A DNA stretch of 64,000 nt, from contig NIVC01001747.1 of NCBI GenBank assembly GCA_002269645.1, positions 218,416 through 282,415 of the forward strand. Reading direction: 5' to 3'. Positions 29,051 through 44,232 of the stretch are shown here, piece after piece; the stretch's first letter is position 1; every line of letters begins with the position of its first letter. The notes beneath the pieces were generated by a model that had not been told where the DNA came from, made no database searches, and was given only the letters and a program-made list of their open reading frames with translations. The position numbers and the translations under genes were made by a program. The stretch comes from Macrostomum lignano. Lineage: Eukaryota.

Positions 29051-32000
29051 TCAGTTCTGTTCGATCTCAACTCCTGTCGGTGACATCGTCTCCTCGAGCG
29101 TCGCCTGTGACTCGTCTAAGGTTCAAAGGATCAAAGTTATGAGCCAGAAACGTTTAAAGCAAAGACGATTTTACCTCACTCAGCCACAACCCCCAATATC
29201 ACCCTTCAGCCACAACCCTCCCCCAATATCTCCCTTCAGCCACACCTCCCCCAATATCACCTCTCAGCCACACCCCCGCCAATATCACCCCTCAGCCACA
29301 GCCCCGCCCCCAACATCACCCCTCAGCCACACCCCCGCCCCAATATCACCCCTCAGCCACAACCCCCCCAATATCTCCCTTCAGCCACACCTCCCCCAAT
29401 ATCACCTCTCAGCCACACCCCCGCCAATATCACCCCTCAGCCACAACCCCCCAATATCACCCCTCAGCTACAACCCACGCCAATATCACCCCTCAGCCAC
29501 AACCCCTCTCCCAATATCACCCCTCAGCCACAACCCCACGCCAATCACCCTCAGCCACAACCCCACGCCAATCACCCCTCAGCCACAGCCCACCCCCAAC
29601 ATCACCCCTCAGCCACACCCCCGCCCCCAATATCACCCCTCAGCCACAACCCTACGCCAATCACCCCTCAGCCACAACCCCCCAATATCACCCTTCAGCC
29701 ACAACCCTCCCTCAATATCTCCCTTCAGCCACACCTCCCCCAATATCACCTCTCAGCCACACCCCGCCAATATCACCCCTCAGCCACAACCCCCCAATAT
29801 CACCCCTCAGCTACAACCCCACGCCAATATCACCCCTCAGCCACAACCCCTCTCCCAATATCACCCTCAGCCACAACCCCACGCCAATCACCCCTCAGCC
29901 ACAACCCCCAATATCACCCCTCAGCTACAACCCCACGCCAATATCGCCCCTCAGCCACAACCCCTCAGAATCACCCCTCAGCCACAACCCCCACCCAATA
30001 TCACCCCTCAGCCACAACCCCTCTCCCAATATCACCCCTCAGCCACAACCCCTCTCCCAATATCACCCCTCAGCCACAACCCCTCTCCCAATATCACCCC
30101 TCAGCCACAACCCCTCTCCCAATATCACCCCTCAGCCACACCCCCCTCACCGCTAGAGTCGCAGTCGTGAATGCTCAAATTCTGATTAGTAGCAGACGGC
30201 GAACTGTCGAAATCAACCTCATCGAAATCGTCATCCCCGAGTGGATCGTCCAGCTCTGGCGGCGAGCGAGACGTCAATGCTGGCGGCTGCTTCTTGTTGG
30301 CATTGTCCTCGTGGCGCGGGTCGCACACGACGGTTGTCTTCTTCTTCTTGCTGCTCGCAGAAGTAGACGAGGTGGTGGCGGCACCGCTGGAGAAAGCGGC
30401 TCCGGTGTCGACGGCCTCGGCTGTGTTGGCCGTGTCGCCGCCCTGCGGATGCTGCTGACTGTCGGAGCCTTCGCTGCAGCCGCTTAAGCCGCTGCTGCCC
30501 AGAGTTCCGCGTCTGGGATTAATCGAGGTGTTTGAATTGTGTGTTTTAAAGGCTCTAATTTAGGGGGTTTATGCCTCCAATTTGGCGTGTTTATGCCTCT
30601 AATTTGGCGTGTTTATGGCTCTAATTTGGGGTGTTTATGGCTCTAATTTGGGGTGTTTATGGCTCTAATTTGGGGTGTTTATGGCTCTAATTTGGGGTGT
30701 TTATGGCTCTAATTTGGGGTGTTTATGGCTCTAATTTGGGGTGTTTATGGCTCTAATTTGGGGTGTTTATAGCTCTAATTTGGGGTGTTTATGGCTCTAA
30801 TTTGGTGTGTTTGACTACAATTTGGTGTTTAAGGCTCTGATTTAGGATGTTTTAGGATTCAATTTGAGGTGTTTTAAGGCTGTAATTTGGTGTGTTGAAA
30901 AATCTAATTTAGGGTGTGTTTAAGACTGTAATTTGGTGTGTTGAAAAATCTAATTTAGGGTGTGTTTAAGACTGTAATTTGGTGTGTTGAAGGATCTAAT
31001 TTAGGGTGTTTAAGGCTCCAATTTAAGGTGTGTTTAAGGCTCTAATTTGGTGTGTTGACGGATTTAATTTAGGGTGTTTAAGCTCCAGTTTAGGATGTTT
31101 TTAAGGCTGTAATTTGGTGTGTTGAAGGATCTAATTTCGGGTGTGTTTAAGACTGTAATTTGGTGTGTTGAAAAATCTAATTTAGGGTGTGTTTAAGACT
31201 GTAATTTGGTGTGTTGAAGGATCTAATTTAGGGTGTTTAAGGCTCCAATTTAAGGTGTGTTTAAGGCTCTAATTTGGTGTGTTGACGGATTTAATTTAGG
31301 GTGTTTAAGCTCCAGTTTAGGATGTTTTTAAGGCTGTAATTTGGTGTGTTGAAGGATCTAATTTCGGGTGTGTTTAAGACTGTAATTTGGTGTGTTGAAG
31401 GATCTAATTTCGGGTGTTTAAGGCTCTAGTCTAGGGTGTGTTTAAGGCTCTAATTTGGTGTTTTGAAGGATCTAATTTAGGGTGTTTAAAGCTTTGGGGT
31501 GTTTATGGCTCCAATTCTCACCTGAGATGCTGTCGAACCATGGATAGTCGAGCCGTCAAGATTTGCTCCTTACGCCGAGCTCCATCGTTGTCGGCGCTGT
31601 CAACTTCGTCGGTGGTGACGCTCAGAGCGTTCGTTGACGCCAAGTTGCTCTGATTTTTGCCGCCCTTCTTGTCCTTCTTGCCTTTCTTATCCTCCTTGCT
31701 GCCCTTGCTCATGTTGTCACCTGCGCCAGCGTGGCTGTTGTAGAAACTCGGGAAAGCCTTGAACATCTCGATTCGATTGTCGTTGACGAAGATTTCAGCG
31801 CAATTGCGCTTGTACAGATCGCCGCATAGGGACTGCATGGCCACCTCCTCCGGCACTGGTGGATGTCAATTAGATTGGTTTGAAGATCCCGAGATCCCTG
31901 ATCCCGATATCCCTGATCCCGATATCCCTGATCCCGATATCCCTGATCCCGATATCCCTGATCCCGATATCCCTGATCCCGATATCCCTGATCCCGATAT

Positions 32001-41400: not shown

Positions 41401-44232
41401 ACATCAAGCTACAGCCGGCGGTTAAGCTCCACAGGACCATCGCGGACCCCCTGCCCGGGCAGCTCGACATGCGGCAGGTGCGACACAATTTCAAACTCGT
41501 GAAGCTGCGGCAGCATCCGATGCAGCTGGACGCTGAAGGTCGGAGGCTGGAGGATGTTGGCGTAAGCAGGCTGGACCATGTGAGTGGCTGATTTCCTTGG
41601 AAATTGCTGTTGTGTGCATTAAATCCTCGTGAAATTATCCCATCCTAGAATTATCCCATCCTAGATTTATCCCCACATAGAATTATCCCATTCTAGAATT
41701 ATCCCTTCCTAGATTTATCCCAACCTAGAATTATACCATCCTAGAATTATTCAACCCTAGGTAGAATTATCCCATCCTAATCTTAGAGTCATCCAATCTT
41801 AGAATGATCCCATCCTAGAATTAGAATATCTCAATATAGAACTATTTCAATATAGAATTATCCCATCCTAGAATTATCCCATCCTAGAATTATCCCATCG
41901 TAGAATTATCCCATCCTAGAATTATCCCATCGTAGAATTATCCCATCCTAGAATTATCCCATCCTAGAATTGTCGCGTTCTAGAAATATTAAATTCTAGC
42001 ATTATTTCATCCTATAATAACTAGAATGATCCCACTCTAGTATGATCCCATTAAATTACGATAAAAAACTGCCCGTAGATCCTCAACCGGCGCCTTGTGC
42101 AGCTGCACAAAAACTCGCTGATAAAAGACGGCGGAAAAAGGCCGGACTCAGAGCTGAGCACCTCTGCCGCCTACCCCGAGTGGCTCAGCTTCCAGCTGCG
42201 AATAATGAAGACATTCGCCGCCACACGTTGGATGCTGTTTGTAGCTCAGCGAAAGAAGCTGCGCTCCTCTGAACCCGATAATATTGAACGGCGGGCCAAC
42301 GTTCGAGTGAGCAAATTAATGGAATGCGATTCCTTGTTTGACTTGATCACGTGGACTGTCTGACTCATTCAAACACTGTCTGACTCATTCACATTCACTG
42401 TCTGACTCATTCTCATTCACACTCACTTCACTGTCTAACACATTCACACAATTTTTGACTCATTTACATTCACTTTCTGACTCATTCACACACTGACTGA
42501 CTCATTCACACACTGACTGACTCATTCACACACTGACTGACTCATTCACACACTGACTGACTCATTCACACACTGTCTGACTCATTAAAAATCTGTCTGA
42601 TTAATTCACAAGCTGTCTGACTCGTTCAGCCACCAGCTGACTCATTCACAGGTTGTCATAAATTTGAGAGTGCCTTATTAGTTTGCAAGCAACGTTTCTG
42701 TAATTTTACTATCATCAGTCTAACTGTAATTATTTTCAGATCACTACTCATACAAATCTATCTAGATATTACGAGCGTAGTTTTCAATTTTAAATTACAG
42801 TCTTCACATTTCCTCCTCTTTAATATGTAGGAGTCGCACAAGTACAATCCGAAGTACATTGACGTTTGGTCTACCAGCGTGTCAGTGTCCGTAAAGGATG
42901 GCAGTTTACTACGAGACGCAATTGATCCTGCTTTCGCTCGCGTGGGTCTTGACAAAAGGTCGGATTTTCGCTACAGTGTGGGCTGCTTTCTGGGAGACAA
43001 GCGGCAGAGTGGACCGAATAGCAGCCAGCTGATTGGTGGGTAATCTTTGAACCCTCACTGAGGCAAACCTAAACTACAGCCCTCACACGGGCCAATAAAA
43101 CACACCCCTCACACGGGCCAATAAAACAACACCCTCACCCAGGCCAATTAAACCACACCCCTCACCCAGGCCAATCAAACCACACCCCTCACCCAGGCCA
43201 ATTAAACCACACCCCTCACCCAGCCCAATCAAACCACACCCCTCACCCAAGCCAATTAAACCACACCCGTCACTTAGGTCAATTAAACCACACCCCTCCC
43301 ACAGGCCAATTAAACCACACCCGTCACTTAGGTCAATGAAACCACACCCCTCACCCAGGCCAATTAAACCACACCCCTCACCCAGGCCAATTAAACCACA
43401 CCCCTCGCCCAGGCCAATTAAACCACACCCCTCCCACAGGCCAATTAAACCACACCCGTCACTTAGGTCAATGAAACCACACCCCTCACCCAGGCCAATT
43501 AAACCACACCCCTCACCCAGGCCAATTAAACCACACCCCTCACCCAGGCCAATTAAACCACACCCCTCACCCAGGCCAATTAAACCACACCCCTCACCCA
43601 GGCCAATTAAACCACACCCCTCCCACAGGCCAATTAAACCACACCCGTCACTTAGGTCAATGAAACCACACCCCTCACCCAGGCCAATTAAACCACACCC
43701 CTCACCCAGGCCAATTAAACCACACCCCTCGCCCAGGCTAATCAAACCACACCCCTCACCCAGGCCAATTAAACCACACCCCTCACCCAGGCCAATTAAA
43801 CCACACCCCTCACCTAAGCCAATTAAACCACACCCTTCACCCAGGCCAATTAAACCACACCCGTCACTTAGGTCAATGAAACCACACCCCTCACCCAGGC
43901 CAATTAAACCAAACCCGTCAATCAATGCAAGTAAACCGCTTCATACCAACAGGCATTTAATCGGACCGTACTTAGTACTCAGGCTTTTGTCTGGTCAACT
44001 GACTCAATTTTTAACTTCTCTATCCGCAGTTCCGGTCGAAGTATTCCCTTCTACACCAGTTCGAGACCTCTACCGCATGAACGCATCCGAGATATTTCTA
44101 AACGACAACAAATTGATTCTGTTCGACGGCCTCCCAGAATCTGTGCACGGCTACCCTGGCTGGGGCAAAGATTTTAGGAAAGAAGAACCGAAACCAGCTG
44201 TGAAAAAGAAGGGCTGCTGCTCGTGTCGTTAA
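38442..44232 (+). CDS. Uncharacterised ~506-aa protein, paralogue B of the head-to-head pair
   Basis: Exons 38442-38560, 38967-39076, 40150-40521, 40610-40681, 41368-41579, 42079-42306, 42831-43035, 44030-44232. Phases 2,1,1,1,0,0,1 all join; total 1521 nt. The last four exons are homologous to paralogue A. Ends KKKGCCSCR*. Confidence 0.82.
38600..38930. repeat. 21-bp minisatellite GTCACC(C/T)(A/G)TTAGACAGATGCT
   Basis: Tandem units in intron 1 of paralogue B. Confidence 0.93.
39195..40145. repeat. 17-bp minisatellite (C/G)ACCTGTTAGACACACT
   Basis: About 55 units running up to the acceptor at 40149. Confidence 0.95.
40770..41352. repeat. ~28-bp degenerate minisatellite AAGAATGGCGCCAGATTAAAGCGCCAAT
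   Basis: Tandem units. Confidence 0.9.
41630..41995. repeat. 16-bp minisatellite CTAGAATTATCCCATC
   Basis: Degenerate tandem units. Confidence 0.88.
42355..42650. repeat. ACTGACTCATTCACAC minisatellite
   Basis: Degenerate tandem units. Confidence 0.85.
43085..43920. repeat. 27-bp minisatellite AGGCCAATTAAACCACACCCCTCACCC
   Basis: About 30 units in the last intron of paralogue B. Confidence 0.96.

What the first reader, a model, noticed from the sequence alone, without database searches (positions are those of the whole stretch)
29051..44232. Head-to-head pair of diverged paralogues defining an unnamed protein family
Seen: splicing the exons by hand gives two genes pointing away from each other, with ATGs ~2.8 kb apart. 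Four consecutive exons are homologous with the same bounding intron phases (1,0,0,1). Matched segments A/B: NFLMVKAHEHPTQ / NFKLVKLRQHPMQ; YPDWIRFTFRFKK..KRWAEF / YPEWLSFQLRIMK..TRWMLF; KYLPAYYDIWSTSITVFAK..VDPVFSKLGLDSRADFRFTLGCFEGDKR / KYNPKYIDVWSTSVSVSVK..IDPAFARVGLDKRSDFRYSVGCFLGDKR; VPEEV..DLYKRNCAEIFVNDNRIEMF / VPVEV..DLYRMNASEIFLNDNKLILF. The N- and C-termini are unrelated and disordered-looking. The ORF track shows none of this. Inference: an old inverted duplication retained as a co-regulated pair. I do not recognise the ~270-aa core as a named domain.
Basis: partly seen in the sequence, partly recalled or inferred. Interest (0 to 1): 0.75.

Follow-up and report, generated by a model that had tools for sequence, protein, structure and literature searches.

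The report
Divergent paralogue pair, flatworm-only protein family
Two neighbouring genes of the flatworm Macrostomum lignano that point away from each other are real, intact, distant copies of one another, and they belong to a small uncharacterised protein family found so far only in this species; that is fairly ordinary in a genome where almost half the genes have no relatives elsewhere.

Summary
Gene A (minus strand, 29051-35652, 9 exons, 627 aa) and gene B (plus strand, 38442-44232, 7 exons, 459 aa) lie head-to-head with their ATGs 2,790 bp apart. They share a core of about 245 aa (32% identity, E about 1e-32 to 1e-34), with introns at the same positions and phases (1,0,0,1). The termini are unrelated and look disordered.

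The window comes from Macrostomum lignano. Both genes are already in public databases as unnamed or misnamed proteins. There is no significant match in Pfam or, by sequence, in the PDB. An exhaustive HMMER search of 1.84 billion proteins found credible relatives only in M. lignano.

The pair does not define the family. There are at least four A-like paralogue groups and a second B-like gene. B is not A's sister, because the A-like/B-like split predates the A-like radiation. A second locus has an A-like gene next to a B-like gene, but in tandem orientation, and two other A-like genes stand alone.

Two low-confidence AlphaFold models both suggest a helical half followed by a ubiquitin-like beta-grasp module of Ras-association/RBD type. 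This is a lead only. Function and co-regulation remain untested. Interest is modest.

The parts
29051..35652 (-). Gene A (A-like family member; = UniProt A0A1I8G7T1 / NCBI BOX15_Mlig031835). CDS exons: 35652-35316, 35129-35100, 35009-34875, 34352-34153, 33394-33182, 32438-32231, 31855-31522, 30512-30151, 29115-29051 (stop TGA 29053-29051). 627 aa.
   Evidence: All junctions are GT-AG and the reading frame is open. 97.7% identity to P0005 and 94.5% to P0022.
31522..34352 (-). Gene A conserved core: four exons (34352-34153, 33394-33182, 32438-32231, 31855-31522), bounding and internal intron phases 1,0,0,1.
   Evidence: Family HMM matches each exon at E 1e-35 to 1e-45.
31743..32438 (-). Gene A exons 3-4 of the core, encoding the predicted ubiquitin-like beta-grasp module (residues about 254-336 of P0005). 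The phase-1 intron falls in the loop that carries the A-like 'RAGKAKIxGxP' insert.
   Evidence: AF2 secondary structure and local pLDDT of 70-81. Foldseek top hits are RA/RBD/UBL/FERM-F1 domains, best E=6.8e-3. Low confidence.
35100..35129 (-).
   Evidence: Strong acceptor and donor (ttttcag|AG ... AAAG|gtaagt). Present in P0005 and P0022 and homologous to 'SLENTSAVAKG' in the paralogues.
36718..36939 (-). Possible extra 5' exon of gene A, used in the NCBI model P0022 (MLASSSAYKNRL...). It would bring A's 5' end to within about 1.5 kb of B's ATG.
   Evidence: The open stretch in the window matches the N-terminus of P0022. Not verified with transcripts.
35653..38441 (.). Region between the two ATGs (2,789 bp). 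It contains two related 20-bp minisatellite arrays (35915-36667 and 37319-37853), both in the same orientation.
   Evidence: The arrays are direct, so the promoter region itself is not an inverted duplicate.
38442..44232 (+). Gene B (B-like family member; = UniProt A0A1I8I075 / A0A1I8G6M2). CDS exons: 38442-38560, 38967-39076, 40219-40521, 41368-41579, 42079-42306, 42831-43035, 44030-44232 (stop included). 459 aa.
   Evidence: All junctions are GT-AG. The translation equals P0003 except K197R and V362M. P0002 matches the core exactly.
41368..44232 (+). Gene B conserved core: four exons with intron phases 1,0,0,1. The protein ends in the polybasic, cysteine-rich tail ...KKKGCCSCR.

Best explanation
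The locus holds two intact, selectively constrained, divergently transcribed paralogous genes of Macrostomum lignano. They belong to a small multi-gene family detected so far only in this species, with two ancient branches: A-like and B-like.

Shown: the gene structures, the paralogy, the conserved intron positions, the size and tree of the family, the lack of any detectable relative outside M. lignano, and signs of purifying selection.

Inferred at about 50% confidence: each protein has a structured core of about 250 aa, made of a helical N-terminal half (core exons 1-2) and a C-terminal ubiquitin-like beta-grasp module (core exons 3-4, of RA/RBD/UBL type). The core sits between long, intrinsically disordered, lineage-variable tails that carry short motifs: LDLQTNNSRRE, lysine-rich patches, a C-terminal VVEETSxES-like motif in A-like proteins, and KKKGCCSCR in B.

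Inferred at low confidence: neither protein has a signal peptide and both have basic patches. The most likely mode of action is an intracellular adaptor or scaffold whose beta-grasp module binds a partner protein. B may be tethered to membranes through its polybasic-cysteine tail.

The head-to-head layout is most simply a relic of an ancient local duplication that separated the A-like and B-like branches. Later block duplication and rearrangement gave the tandem pair and the singletons seen elsewhere in the genome.
For: Gene models and paralogy.
Species and prior annotation.
No named domain: no significant Pfam match in 13 sequences scanned, 12 of them family members, and none in the PDB by sequence, with single sequence or profile.
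Restricted distribution: a profile HMMER search of 1.84e9 representatives found 6 strong hits, all from M. lignano, plus 2 weak hits to repetitive bacterial or metagenomic proteins. A k-mer/HMMER search of 5.8e9 proteins with the family profile found 11 hits, all from M. lignano.
Family tree: the bipartition separating all A-like genes from B and C has support 1.0.
Other loci: L002 holds a tandem B-like plus A-like pair; L003 and L004 hold singletons.
Constraint: gene A pN/pS is 0.24 against the 98%-identical copy in L001, and gene B's CDS has 1 difference in 1,380 nt. The core is conserved across paralogues only 31% identical.
Fold lead: two independently predicted models, for B and for A, give the same beta-alpha-beta-beta-alpha-beta order in the homologous region. 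In both, Foldseek hit lists are dominated by ubiquitin-like beta-grasp domains; for the gene A model several matches span about 80 aligned residues at about 3 A rmsd with target TM 0.58-0.75, and for gene B the comparable matches span about 65 residues.
Against: Both AlphaFold models are poor (mean pLDDT 46 and 41; the alignments had only 4 and 11 rows, all from one species). No Foldseek match reaches E<=0.001 (best 6.8e-3 and 0.12). No Pfam RA, RBD or ubiquitin profile matches the sequences. The beta-grasp assignment therefore rests on consistency between two weak models, not on significance. No expression, localisation or interaction data were reachable, so the adaptor/scaffold role and B's membrane tethering are conjecture. 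The apparent absence outside M. lignano may partly reflect the lack of other Macrostomum or macrostomorph proteomes in the databases searched. L001 is about 98% identical to the window and may be the same locus in another assembly, so it gives no independent support for long-term conservation of the arrangement.
Confidence: 0.6

Rival explanations
1. One reading: an old inverted duplication retained because the two genes share a bidirectional promoter and are co-regulated, perhaps because their products act together as a heteromer in the manner of COL4A1/COL4A2.
For: Head-to-head orientation with ATGs 2,790 bp apart. An annotated extra 5' exon of gene A would narrow the gap to about 1.5 kb or less. 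Both genes are intact and constrained. An A-like gene lies next to a B-like gene at a second locus as well, which hints that linkage of the two branches is old.
Against: At that second locus the two genes are in tandem on the same strand. Two further A-like genes have no B-like neighbour within 10 kb. So the divergent arrangement is not conserved within the family. The spacer is long for a classical bidirectional promoter and is largely minisatellite. No expression data could be obtained.
Confidence: 0.25
2. The family is a very diverged member of an already named family, for example Ras-association/RBD signalling proteins, or one of the domains named in UniProt such as NARG2_C/ICE2. Sequence methods simply fail to see the relationship.
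For: Foldseek hit lists for both models are dominated by RA, RBD and UBL domains. UniProt attaches domain names to several members.
Against: Pfam hmmscan finds none of the named domains in any member, even at E up to 1-10. The UniProt names differ between near-identical or homologous proteins (Aquarius_N, NARG2_C, ULP_PROTEASE, RRM, reverse transcriptase, AAA, PseudoU_synth_2), whereas NCBI calls them hypothetical. That pattern points to an annotation artefact. Profile searches of the PDB give nothing. The Foldseek E-values are not significant.
Confidence: 0.12
3. One or both genes are decaying duplicates (pseudogenes) or artefacts of hand-splicing.
For: The family is lineage-restricted and the tails are low-complexity. 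The introns are full of minisatellites that create many spurious open frames. Earlier automated models of this locus were chimeric (P0004) or mis-framed (P0001).
Against: Both have complete open reading frames with canonical splice sites. Independent database models agree with them. Gene A has pN/pS of 0.24 and gene B's CDS is nearly invariant between copies. Core motifs are invariant across all paralogues.
Confidence: 0.04
4. The family derives from a mobile element or virus and has spread by transposition.
For: There are multiple copies in the genome, and a retroelement lies in the same window.
Against: The genes have many exons with conserved intron positions. No transposase, reverse transcriptase or integrase domain is present in any member. 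No terminal repeats flank them. Copy number is consistent with ordinary paralogy plus the known recent genome duplication. The neighbours differ at each locus.
Confidence: 0.02

Closest known systems
Ubiquitin-like beta-grasp interaction domains (Ras-association RA, Raf-type RBD, UBL, FERM-F1, ATG8)
   Same: The predicted beta-beta-alpha-beta-beta-(alpha)-beta order in core exons 3-4 of both A and B. Foldseek lists for both models are dominated by these domains; for the gene A model the best compact superpositions cover about 80 residues at about 3 A rmsd, and for gene B about 65 residues.
   Different: No significant structural E-value (best 6.8e-3). No sequence or profile similarity. The module is preceded by a helical region specific to this family and is interrupted by a loop insert in the A-like proteins. 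Partner binding is unknown.
Mlig-sperm1 (Mlig020950) family, Grudniewska et al. 2018, PMC5816591
   Same: Another M. lignano multi-gene family with no Pfam domain, a partly disordered protein and several near-identical loci. It shows how such families have been characterised in this animal, by in situ hybridisation and RNAi.
   Different: A different gene family: none of this family's IDs appear in that paper's supplements. Mlig-sperm1 has planarian homologues, whereas no relative of the A/B family was found outside M. lignano.
Head-to-head paralogue pairs sharing a bidirectional promoter (e.g. vertebrate COL4A1/COL4A2; from general knowledge)
   Same: Two paralogues in divergent orientation, with intron positions conserved in the homologous part.
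   Different: The spacer is 1.5-2.8 kb and mostly minisatellite. Co-expression and heteromer formation are untested. The orientation is not conserved at the paralogous locus L002.
Taxonomically restricted ('orphan') gene families of M. lignano
   Same: No homologue outside the species in the databases searched. 44.5% of M. lignano transcript clusters fall in this class (PMC5816591).
   Different: This family has a well-conserved structured core of about 250 aa and at least six diverged paralogue groups, so it is not a young de novo gene.

Membership tests
Ubiquitin-like beta-grasp superfold (RA/RBD/UBL) | beta-beta-alpha-beta-beta-(alpha)-beta topology with a mixed sheet packed against one helix | tested here: inconclusive
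   AF2 models of both A and B predict this element order in the homologous region, but at mean pLDDT 41-46 (local 55-81).
Ubiquitin-like beta-grasp superfold (RA/RBD/UBL) | Statistically significant structural match to solved members | tested here: not met
   Foldseek against the PDB: best E=6.8e-3 (A) and 0.12 (B), with none at E<=0.001. The hit lists are nevertheless consistently beta-grasp.
Ubiquitin-like beta-grasp superfold (RA/RBD/UBL) | Match to the Pfam RA (PF00788), RBD (PF02196) or ubiquitin (PF00240) profiles | tested here: not met
   No such hit in any of the 13 sequences scanned (12 family members), at E thresholds of 1-10.
Ubiquitin-like beta-grasp superfold (RA/RBD/UBL) | Binding of a small GTPase or other defined partner | not testable with these tools
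   Needs pull-down, yeast two-hybrid or AF-multimer with candidate partners.
Families named in UniProt for these proteins (Aquarius_N, NARG2_C, ULP_PROTEASE, RRM, reverse transcriptase, AAA, PseudoU_synth_2) | Presence of the named Pfam domain in the sequence | tested here: not met
   hmmscan of P0001-P0003, P0005-P0008, P0012, P0014, P0017 and P0018 finds none of them. Only unrelated sub-threshold hits appear, at E>=0.13. P0020 and P0024, which carry the PseudoU_synth_2 and AAA names, were not scanned here, but the database lists no precomputed Pfam domain for them.
Bidirectional-promoter gene pair | Divergent (head-to-head) orientation of adjacent genes | tested here: met
   A is on the minus strand and B on the plus strand, with ATGs at 35652 and 38442. 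The layout is the same in L001.
Bidirectional-promoter gene pair | Transcription start sites less than about 1 kb apart | tested here: inconclusive
   ATG to ATG is 2,790 bp. An annotated upstream exon of A (36718-36939) would leave 1.5 kb or less. The true start sites are unknown.
Bidirectional-promoter gene pair | Correlated expression | not testable with these tools
   No expression tables holding the gene IDs could be reached.
Mlig-sperm1 family | Listed among Mlig020950 relatives, with planarian homologues | tested here: not met
   The IDs are absent from the paper's supplements, and no non-Macrostomum homologue was found.

The most novel reading that the evidence does not exclude
The A/B family is a genuinely new domain architecture restricted to Macrostomum or Macrostomorpha: a family-specific helical module fused to a cryptic ubiquitin-like beta-grasp. 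Its two ancient branches, A-like and B-like, work as an obligate heteromeric adaptor pair. That would explain why A-like and B-like genes stay linked at two loci. B would anchor the complex to membranes through its KKKGCCSCR tail, possibly in the fast-evolving reproductive biology of these worms.
Probability: 0.12. Interest if true: 0.45.

Novelty: new member of a known kind. Interest (0 to 1): 0.27.

Why it matters
If confirmed, this adds a well-defined, structured, multi-member family to the large and mostly unexplored set of lineage-restricted genes in a tractable regeneration and reproduction model that has RNAi and transgenesis. It also gives a clean case for asking whether linked, diverged paralogues act together. 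On the practical side, it shows that hand-splicing recovered correct models at a minisatellite-rich locus where earlier automatic annotation produced chimeric or mis-framed models. It also shows that the domain-based UniProt names for these M. lignano entries cannot be trusted. The finding does not bear on any long-standing open question.

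Tried and rejected
I did not try to circumvent this, and did not submit spliced models to structure prediction, which states the same restriction. I used database proteins and single-exon window translations instead.

(2) MAFFT misplaced short exon fragments, so the exon-2 fragment was dropped.

(3) Short donors at 32267 (A) and 43008 (B) were rejected in favour of 32231 and 43035. 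The paralogues conserve the 'RAGKAKIxGxP' segment, and P0003, P0005 and P0022 use the long forms.

(4) An 8-exon gene A model ending at 30125 was replaced once the final exon (29115-29051) and the mini-exon were found.

(5) 'Extra interleaved exons' in L001 were an artefact of two loci stored in one file, corrected.

(6) PDB sequence hits to antibody Fabs (E>=0.075) and to sodium-channel peptides (E>=0.06) were rejected as chance.

(7) P0009 (a Saprospiraceae repeat protein, E=4e-7 summed over 5 repeats) and P0010 (a repeat protein from a metagenome, E=1e-4 over 9 stretches) were rejected as repeat-driven scores.

(8) The UniProt domain names were tested and not reproduced.

(9) Identity with the Mlig-sperm1 family was considered and rejected.

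(10) Searches of paper text and supplements for Mlig031835, Mlig026584, Mlig033303 and Mlig011183 found nothing.

(11) The look-up of encoding contigs found no record for P0001 or P0002.

(12) The third Foldseek job (viral library) and the collection scans of bacterial, viral and metagenome contigs were not used, because they are irrelevant to a flatworm gene.

Full report
OBSERVATION. Splice-site analysis gives two complete genes with canonical GT-AG introns.

Gene A lies on the minus strand and encodes 627 aa. Its exons are 35652-35316, 35129-35100, 35009-34875, 34352-34153, 33394-33182, 32438-32231, 31855-31522, 30512-30151 and 29115-29051. Gene B lies on the plus strand and encodes 459 aa. 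Its exons are 38442-38560, 38967-39076, 40219-40521, 41368-41579, 42079-42306, 42831-43035 and 44030-44232.

The ATGs are 2,790 bp apart. The proteins align in a single block (A196-439 against B210-454, 32% identity, E=1.5e-32; spliced cores alone give 33% over 238 aa, E=1e-34). The three introns inside the block fall at identical positions with phases 0, 0 and 1, and the intron before the block is phase 1 in both genes. The termini share no significant similarity, are rich in disorder-promoting residues, and are predicted with pLDDT below 50.

ORGANISM AND PRIOR ANNOTATION. Protein searches identify the window as Macrostomum lignano. P0002 (UniProt A0A1I8I075) equals gene B's exons, and P0003 (A0A1I8G6M2) equals my full gene B model except at two residues. 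P0005 (A0A1I8G7T1) and P0022 (NCBI BOX15_Mlig031835g3) are gene A. Both confirm a 30-nt mini-exon and the final exon, and P0022 adds a possible 5' exon at about 36.7-36.9 kb.

Locus L001 (GCA_002269645.1, NIVC01000755.1) is collinear with the window at about 98% identity over the 11.6 kb from 34.6 to 46 kb, and shows the same head-to-head pair. It is the same locus in another assembly or a very recent homeologue, so it supports the annotation but not long-term conservation. Older automatic models at this locus are poor. P0004 runs antisense through gene A into gene B, and P0001 is a mis-framed relative of A. The window is 44% tandem repeat, and almost every intron of both genes contains a minisatellite.

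IS THE CORE A NAMED DOMAIN? No. Pfam hmmscan finds nothing significant in the two spliced cores or in eleven database sequences, ten of them family members. The PDB sequence search finds only chance-level hits, both with a single sequence and with a 7-member profile. The UniProt names attached to family members are Aquarius_N, NARG2_C, ULP_PROTEASE, RRM, reverse transcriptase, AAA and PseudoU_synth_2. These differ between homologous and even near-identical proteins, and none is reproduced in any member scanned, while NCBI calls the same proteins hypothetical. I treat them as annotation artefacts.

DISTRIBUTION. A profile HMMER search of 1.84 billion representative proteins returned 8 hits. Six are M. 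lignano proteins. The other two are weak, repeat-driven matches to a bacterial and a metagenomic repeat protein. The family profile searched against 5.8 billion proteins returned 11 clusters, all from M. lignano. As context, 44.5% of M. lignano transcript clusters have no homologue in human, Schmidtea or Schistosoma (PMC5816591). Restriction to this lineage is therefore common, and it may partly reflect the absence of other macrostomorph proteomes from the databases.

FAMILY STRUCTURE AND HISTORY. The A-like branch has at least four groups that are 54-71% identical to one another: Mlig031835 (gene A), Mlig026584 (P0008), Mlig033303 (P0006, P0021) and Mlig011183 (P0007, P0019). Each has several near-identical loci, as expected in this recently duplicated genome.

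Gene B is 30-31% identical to all of the A-like genes. A second B-like gene, 'C', lies upstream of P0008 in L002. It has the same four-exon core and is 37% identical to B. A neighbour-joining tree separates all A-like genes from B and C with support 1.0, and A plus B as sisters gets 0.0. So A and B are not recent copies of each other, because the A-like/B-like split predates the A-like radiation.

An A-like gene lies next to a B-like gene at two loci: head-to-head here and in tandem in L002. The A-like genes in L003 and L004 have no family neighbour within 10 kb. The intron between core exons 1 and 2 is present in A, B and C but has been lost in the P0008, P0019 and P0021 genes.

Both genes appear constrained. 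Gene A shows 14 synonymous and 12 non-synonymous differences from the L001 copy (pN/pS 0.24), and gene B's CDS has 1 difference in 1,380 nt.

STRUCTURE AND LIKELY MODE OF ACTION. AlphaFold2 models are poor overall: gene B protein with 4 alignment rows gives pLDDT 46, and gene A protein with 11 rows gives pLDDT 41. They agree with each other, however. Both show helices in core exons 1-2 and a compact beta-alpha-beta-beta-alpha-beta unit in core exons 3-4, with local pLDDT up to 81.

Foldseek against the PDB gives no significant hit (best E 6.8e-3 and 0.12). Both lists are nevertheless dominated by ubiquitin-like beta-grasp domains: NORE1A RA, Raf RBD, USP7 UBL, FERM-F1, ATG8/LC3, SUMO/ISG15 and TBCE UBL. 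For the gene A model several superpositions cover about 80 residues at about 3 A rmsd with target TM 0.58-0.75; for gene B the comparable ones cover about 65 residues. I take this as a lead at about 50% confidence, not a demonstration.

Neither protein has a signal peptide. Gene A has basic N-terminal and post-domain lysine-rich patches, and gene B ends in KKKGCCSCR. My best mechanistic guess, at low confidence, is an intracellular adaptor or scaffold whose beta-grasp module binds a partner, with short motifs in the disordered tails and possible lipid anchoring of B.

WHAT COULD NOT BE TESTED. Expression, start sites, co-regulation and function remain open. Text and supplement searches for the gene IDs found nothing. 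The published Mlig-sperm1 family is a different family.

VERDICT. But the pair is one corner of a larger family that is already deposited though uncharacterised, and it belongs to a very common class of lineage-restricted genes. The 'inverted duplication kept for co-regulation' idea is neither supported by the paralogous loci nor testable here. Interest is modest.

Noticed in passing
window 1-14600: A tandem segmental duplication of about 7.6 kb. Fatty-acid desaturase exons (Pfam FA_desaturase, E about 2e-9) occur twice with identical translations (1668-2210 and 9277-9765; 2813-3025 and 10423-10635). Flanking open stretches are also duplicated (5609-6703 and 12830-13924).
   Followed up: partly
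whole window; e.g. 29179-30146, 30541-31516, 31885-32223, 33601-34152, 35915-36667, 37319-37853, 39186-40163, 43070-43920: 44% of the window is masked as tandem repeat, and almost every intron of genes A and B carries its own minisatellite (periods 4-58 bp). These create many long spurious open frames. The two 20-bp arrays between the genes are related and lie in direct orientation.
   Followed up: partly
window 54376-55959 (minus strand): A retroelement fragment: an integrase (Integrase_H2C2 E=8e-18, rve E=5e-14) with a gag-like zinc-knuckle ORF upstream (55450-55959, no Pfam hit).
   Followed up: partly
window 17515-23664 (plus strand): Four open stretches (17515-17802, 18775-19203, 21171-21668, 23176-23664) look like repeats of one module of about 100-160 aa, each ending in G-x-PW. 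The three scanned have no Pfam match. Probably another uncharacterised multi-exon gene.
   Followed up: no
database proteins P0002, P0003, P0005-P0007, P0014, P0017, P0018, P0020, P0023, P0024: UniProt entries for M. lignano derived from WormBase ParaSite carry domain-based names (Aquarius_N, NARG2_C, ULP_PROTEASE, RRM, reverse transcriptase, AAA, PseudoU_synth_2). The names differ between homologous proteins, and none was found by Pfam in those scanned here (P0020, P0023 and P0024 were not scanned; the database lists no precomputed domain for them). This looks like a systematic naming artefact for this proteome.
   Followed up: yes
P0004 (MetaClust UPI0007A1E03C); window about 30149-40521, plus strand: A chimeric older gene model. 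It translates the antisense strand of gene A's exons (e.g. 30149-30484, 32248-32409) and then joins gene B's third exon.
   Followed up: partly
window 44160-44229 (gene B C-terminus) and 38442-38560 (gene B exon 1): Gene B ends in a polybasic, cysteine-rich tail (KPAVKKKGCCSCR), which resembles lipidation signals. Its first exon has a C-x4-C-x2-C-x-C pattern. Neither feature occurs in the A-like proteins.
   Followed up: no
L002 12441-12890, L003 12014-12745, L004 11767-13449, compared with window 34352-33182: The phase-0 intron between core exons 1 and 2 is present in A, B and the L002 B-like gene but absent from the P0008, P0019 and P0021 genes. This is an intron loss within the A-like branch.
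   Followed up: partly
A-like proteins (gene A residues about 65-76; P0006-P0008 N-termini and C-termini): Short conserved motifs lie in the otherwise disordered tails of A-like proteins: one to three copies of (R/L)LDLQTNNS(R/K)RE, an LW(M/L)N-x-P motif, DYEVVS(D/E)L, and a C-terminal (L/V)xVVEETSxES motif (ATLEETMSP in gene A). No known counterpart was recognised.
   Followed up: no
window 50610-51425 (minus strand): A 272-aa open stretch with several hydrophobic segments, suggesting a multi-pass membrane protein. It has no Pfam match.
   Followed up: no
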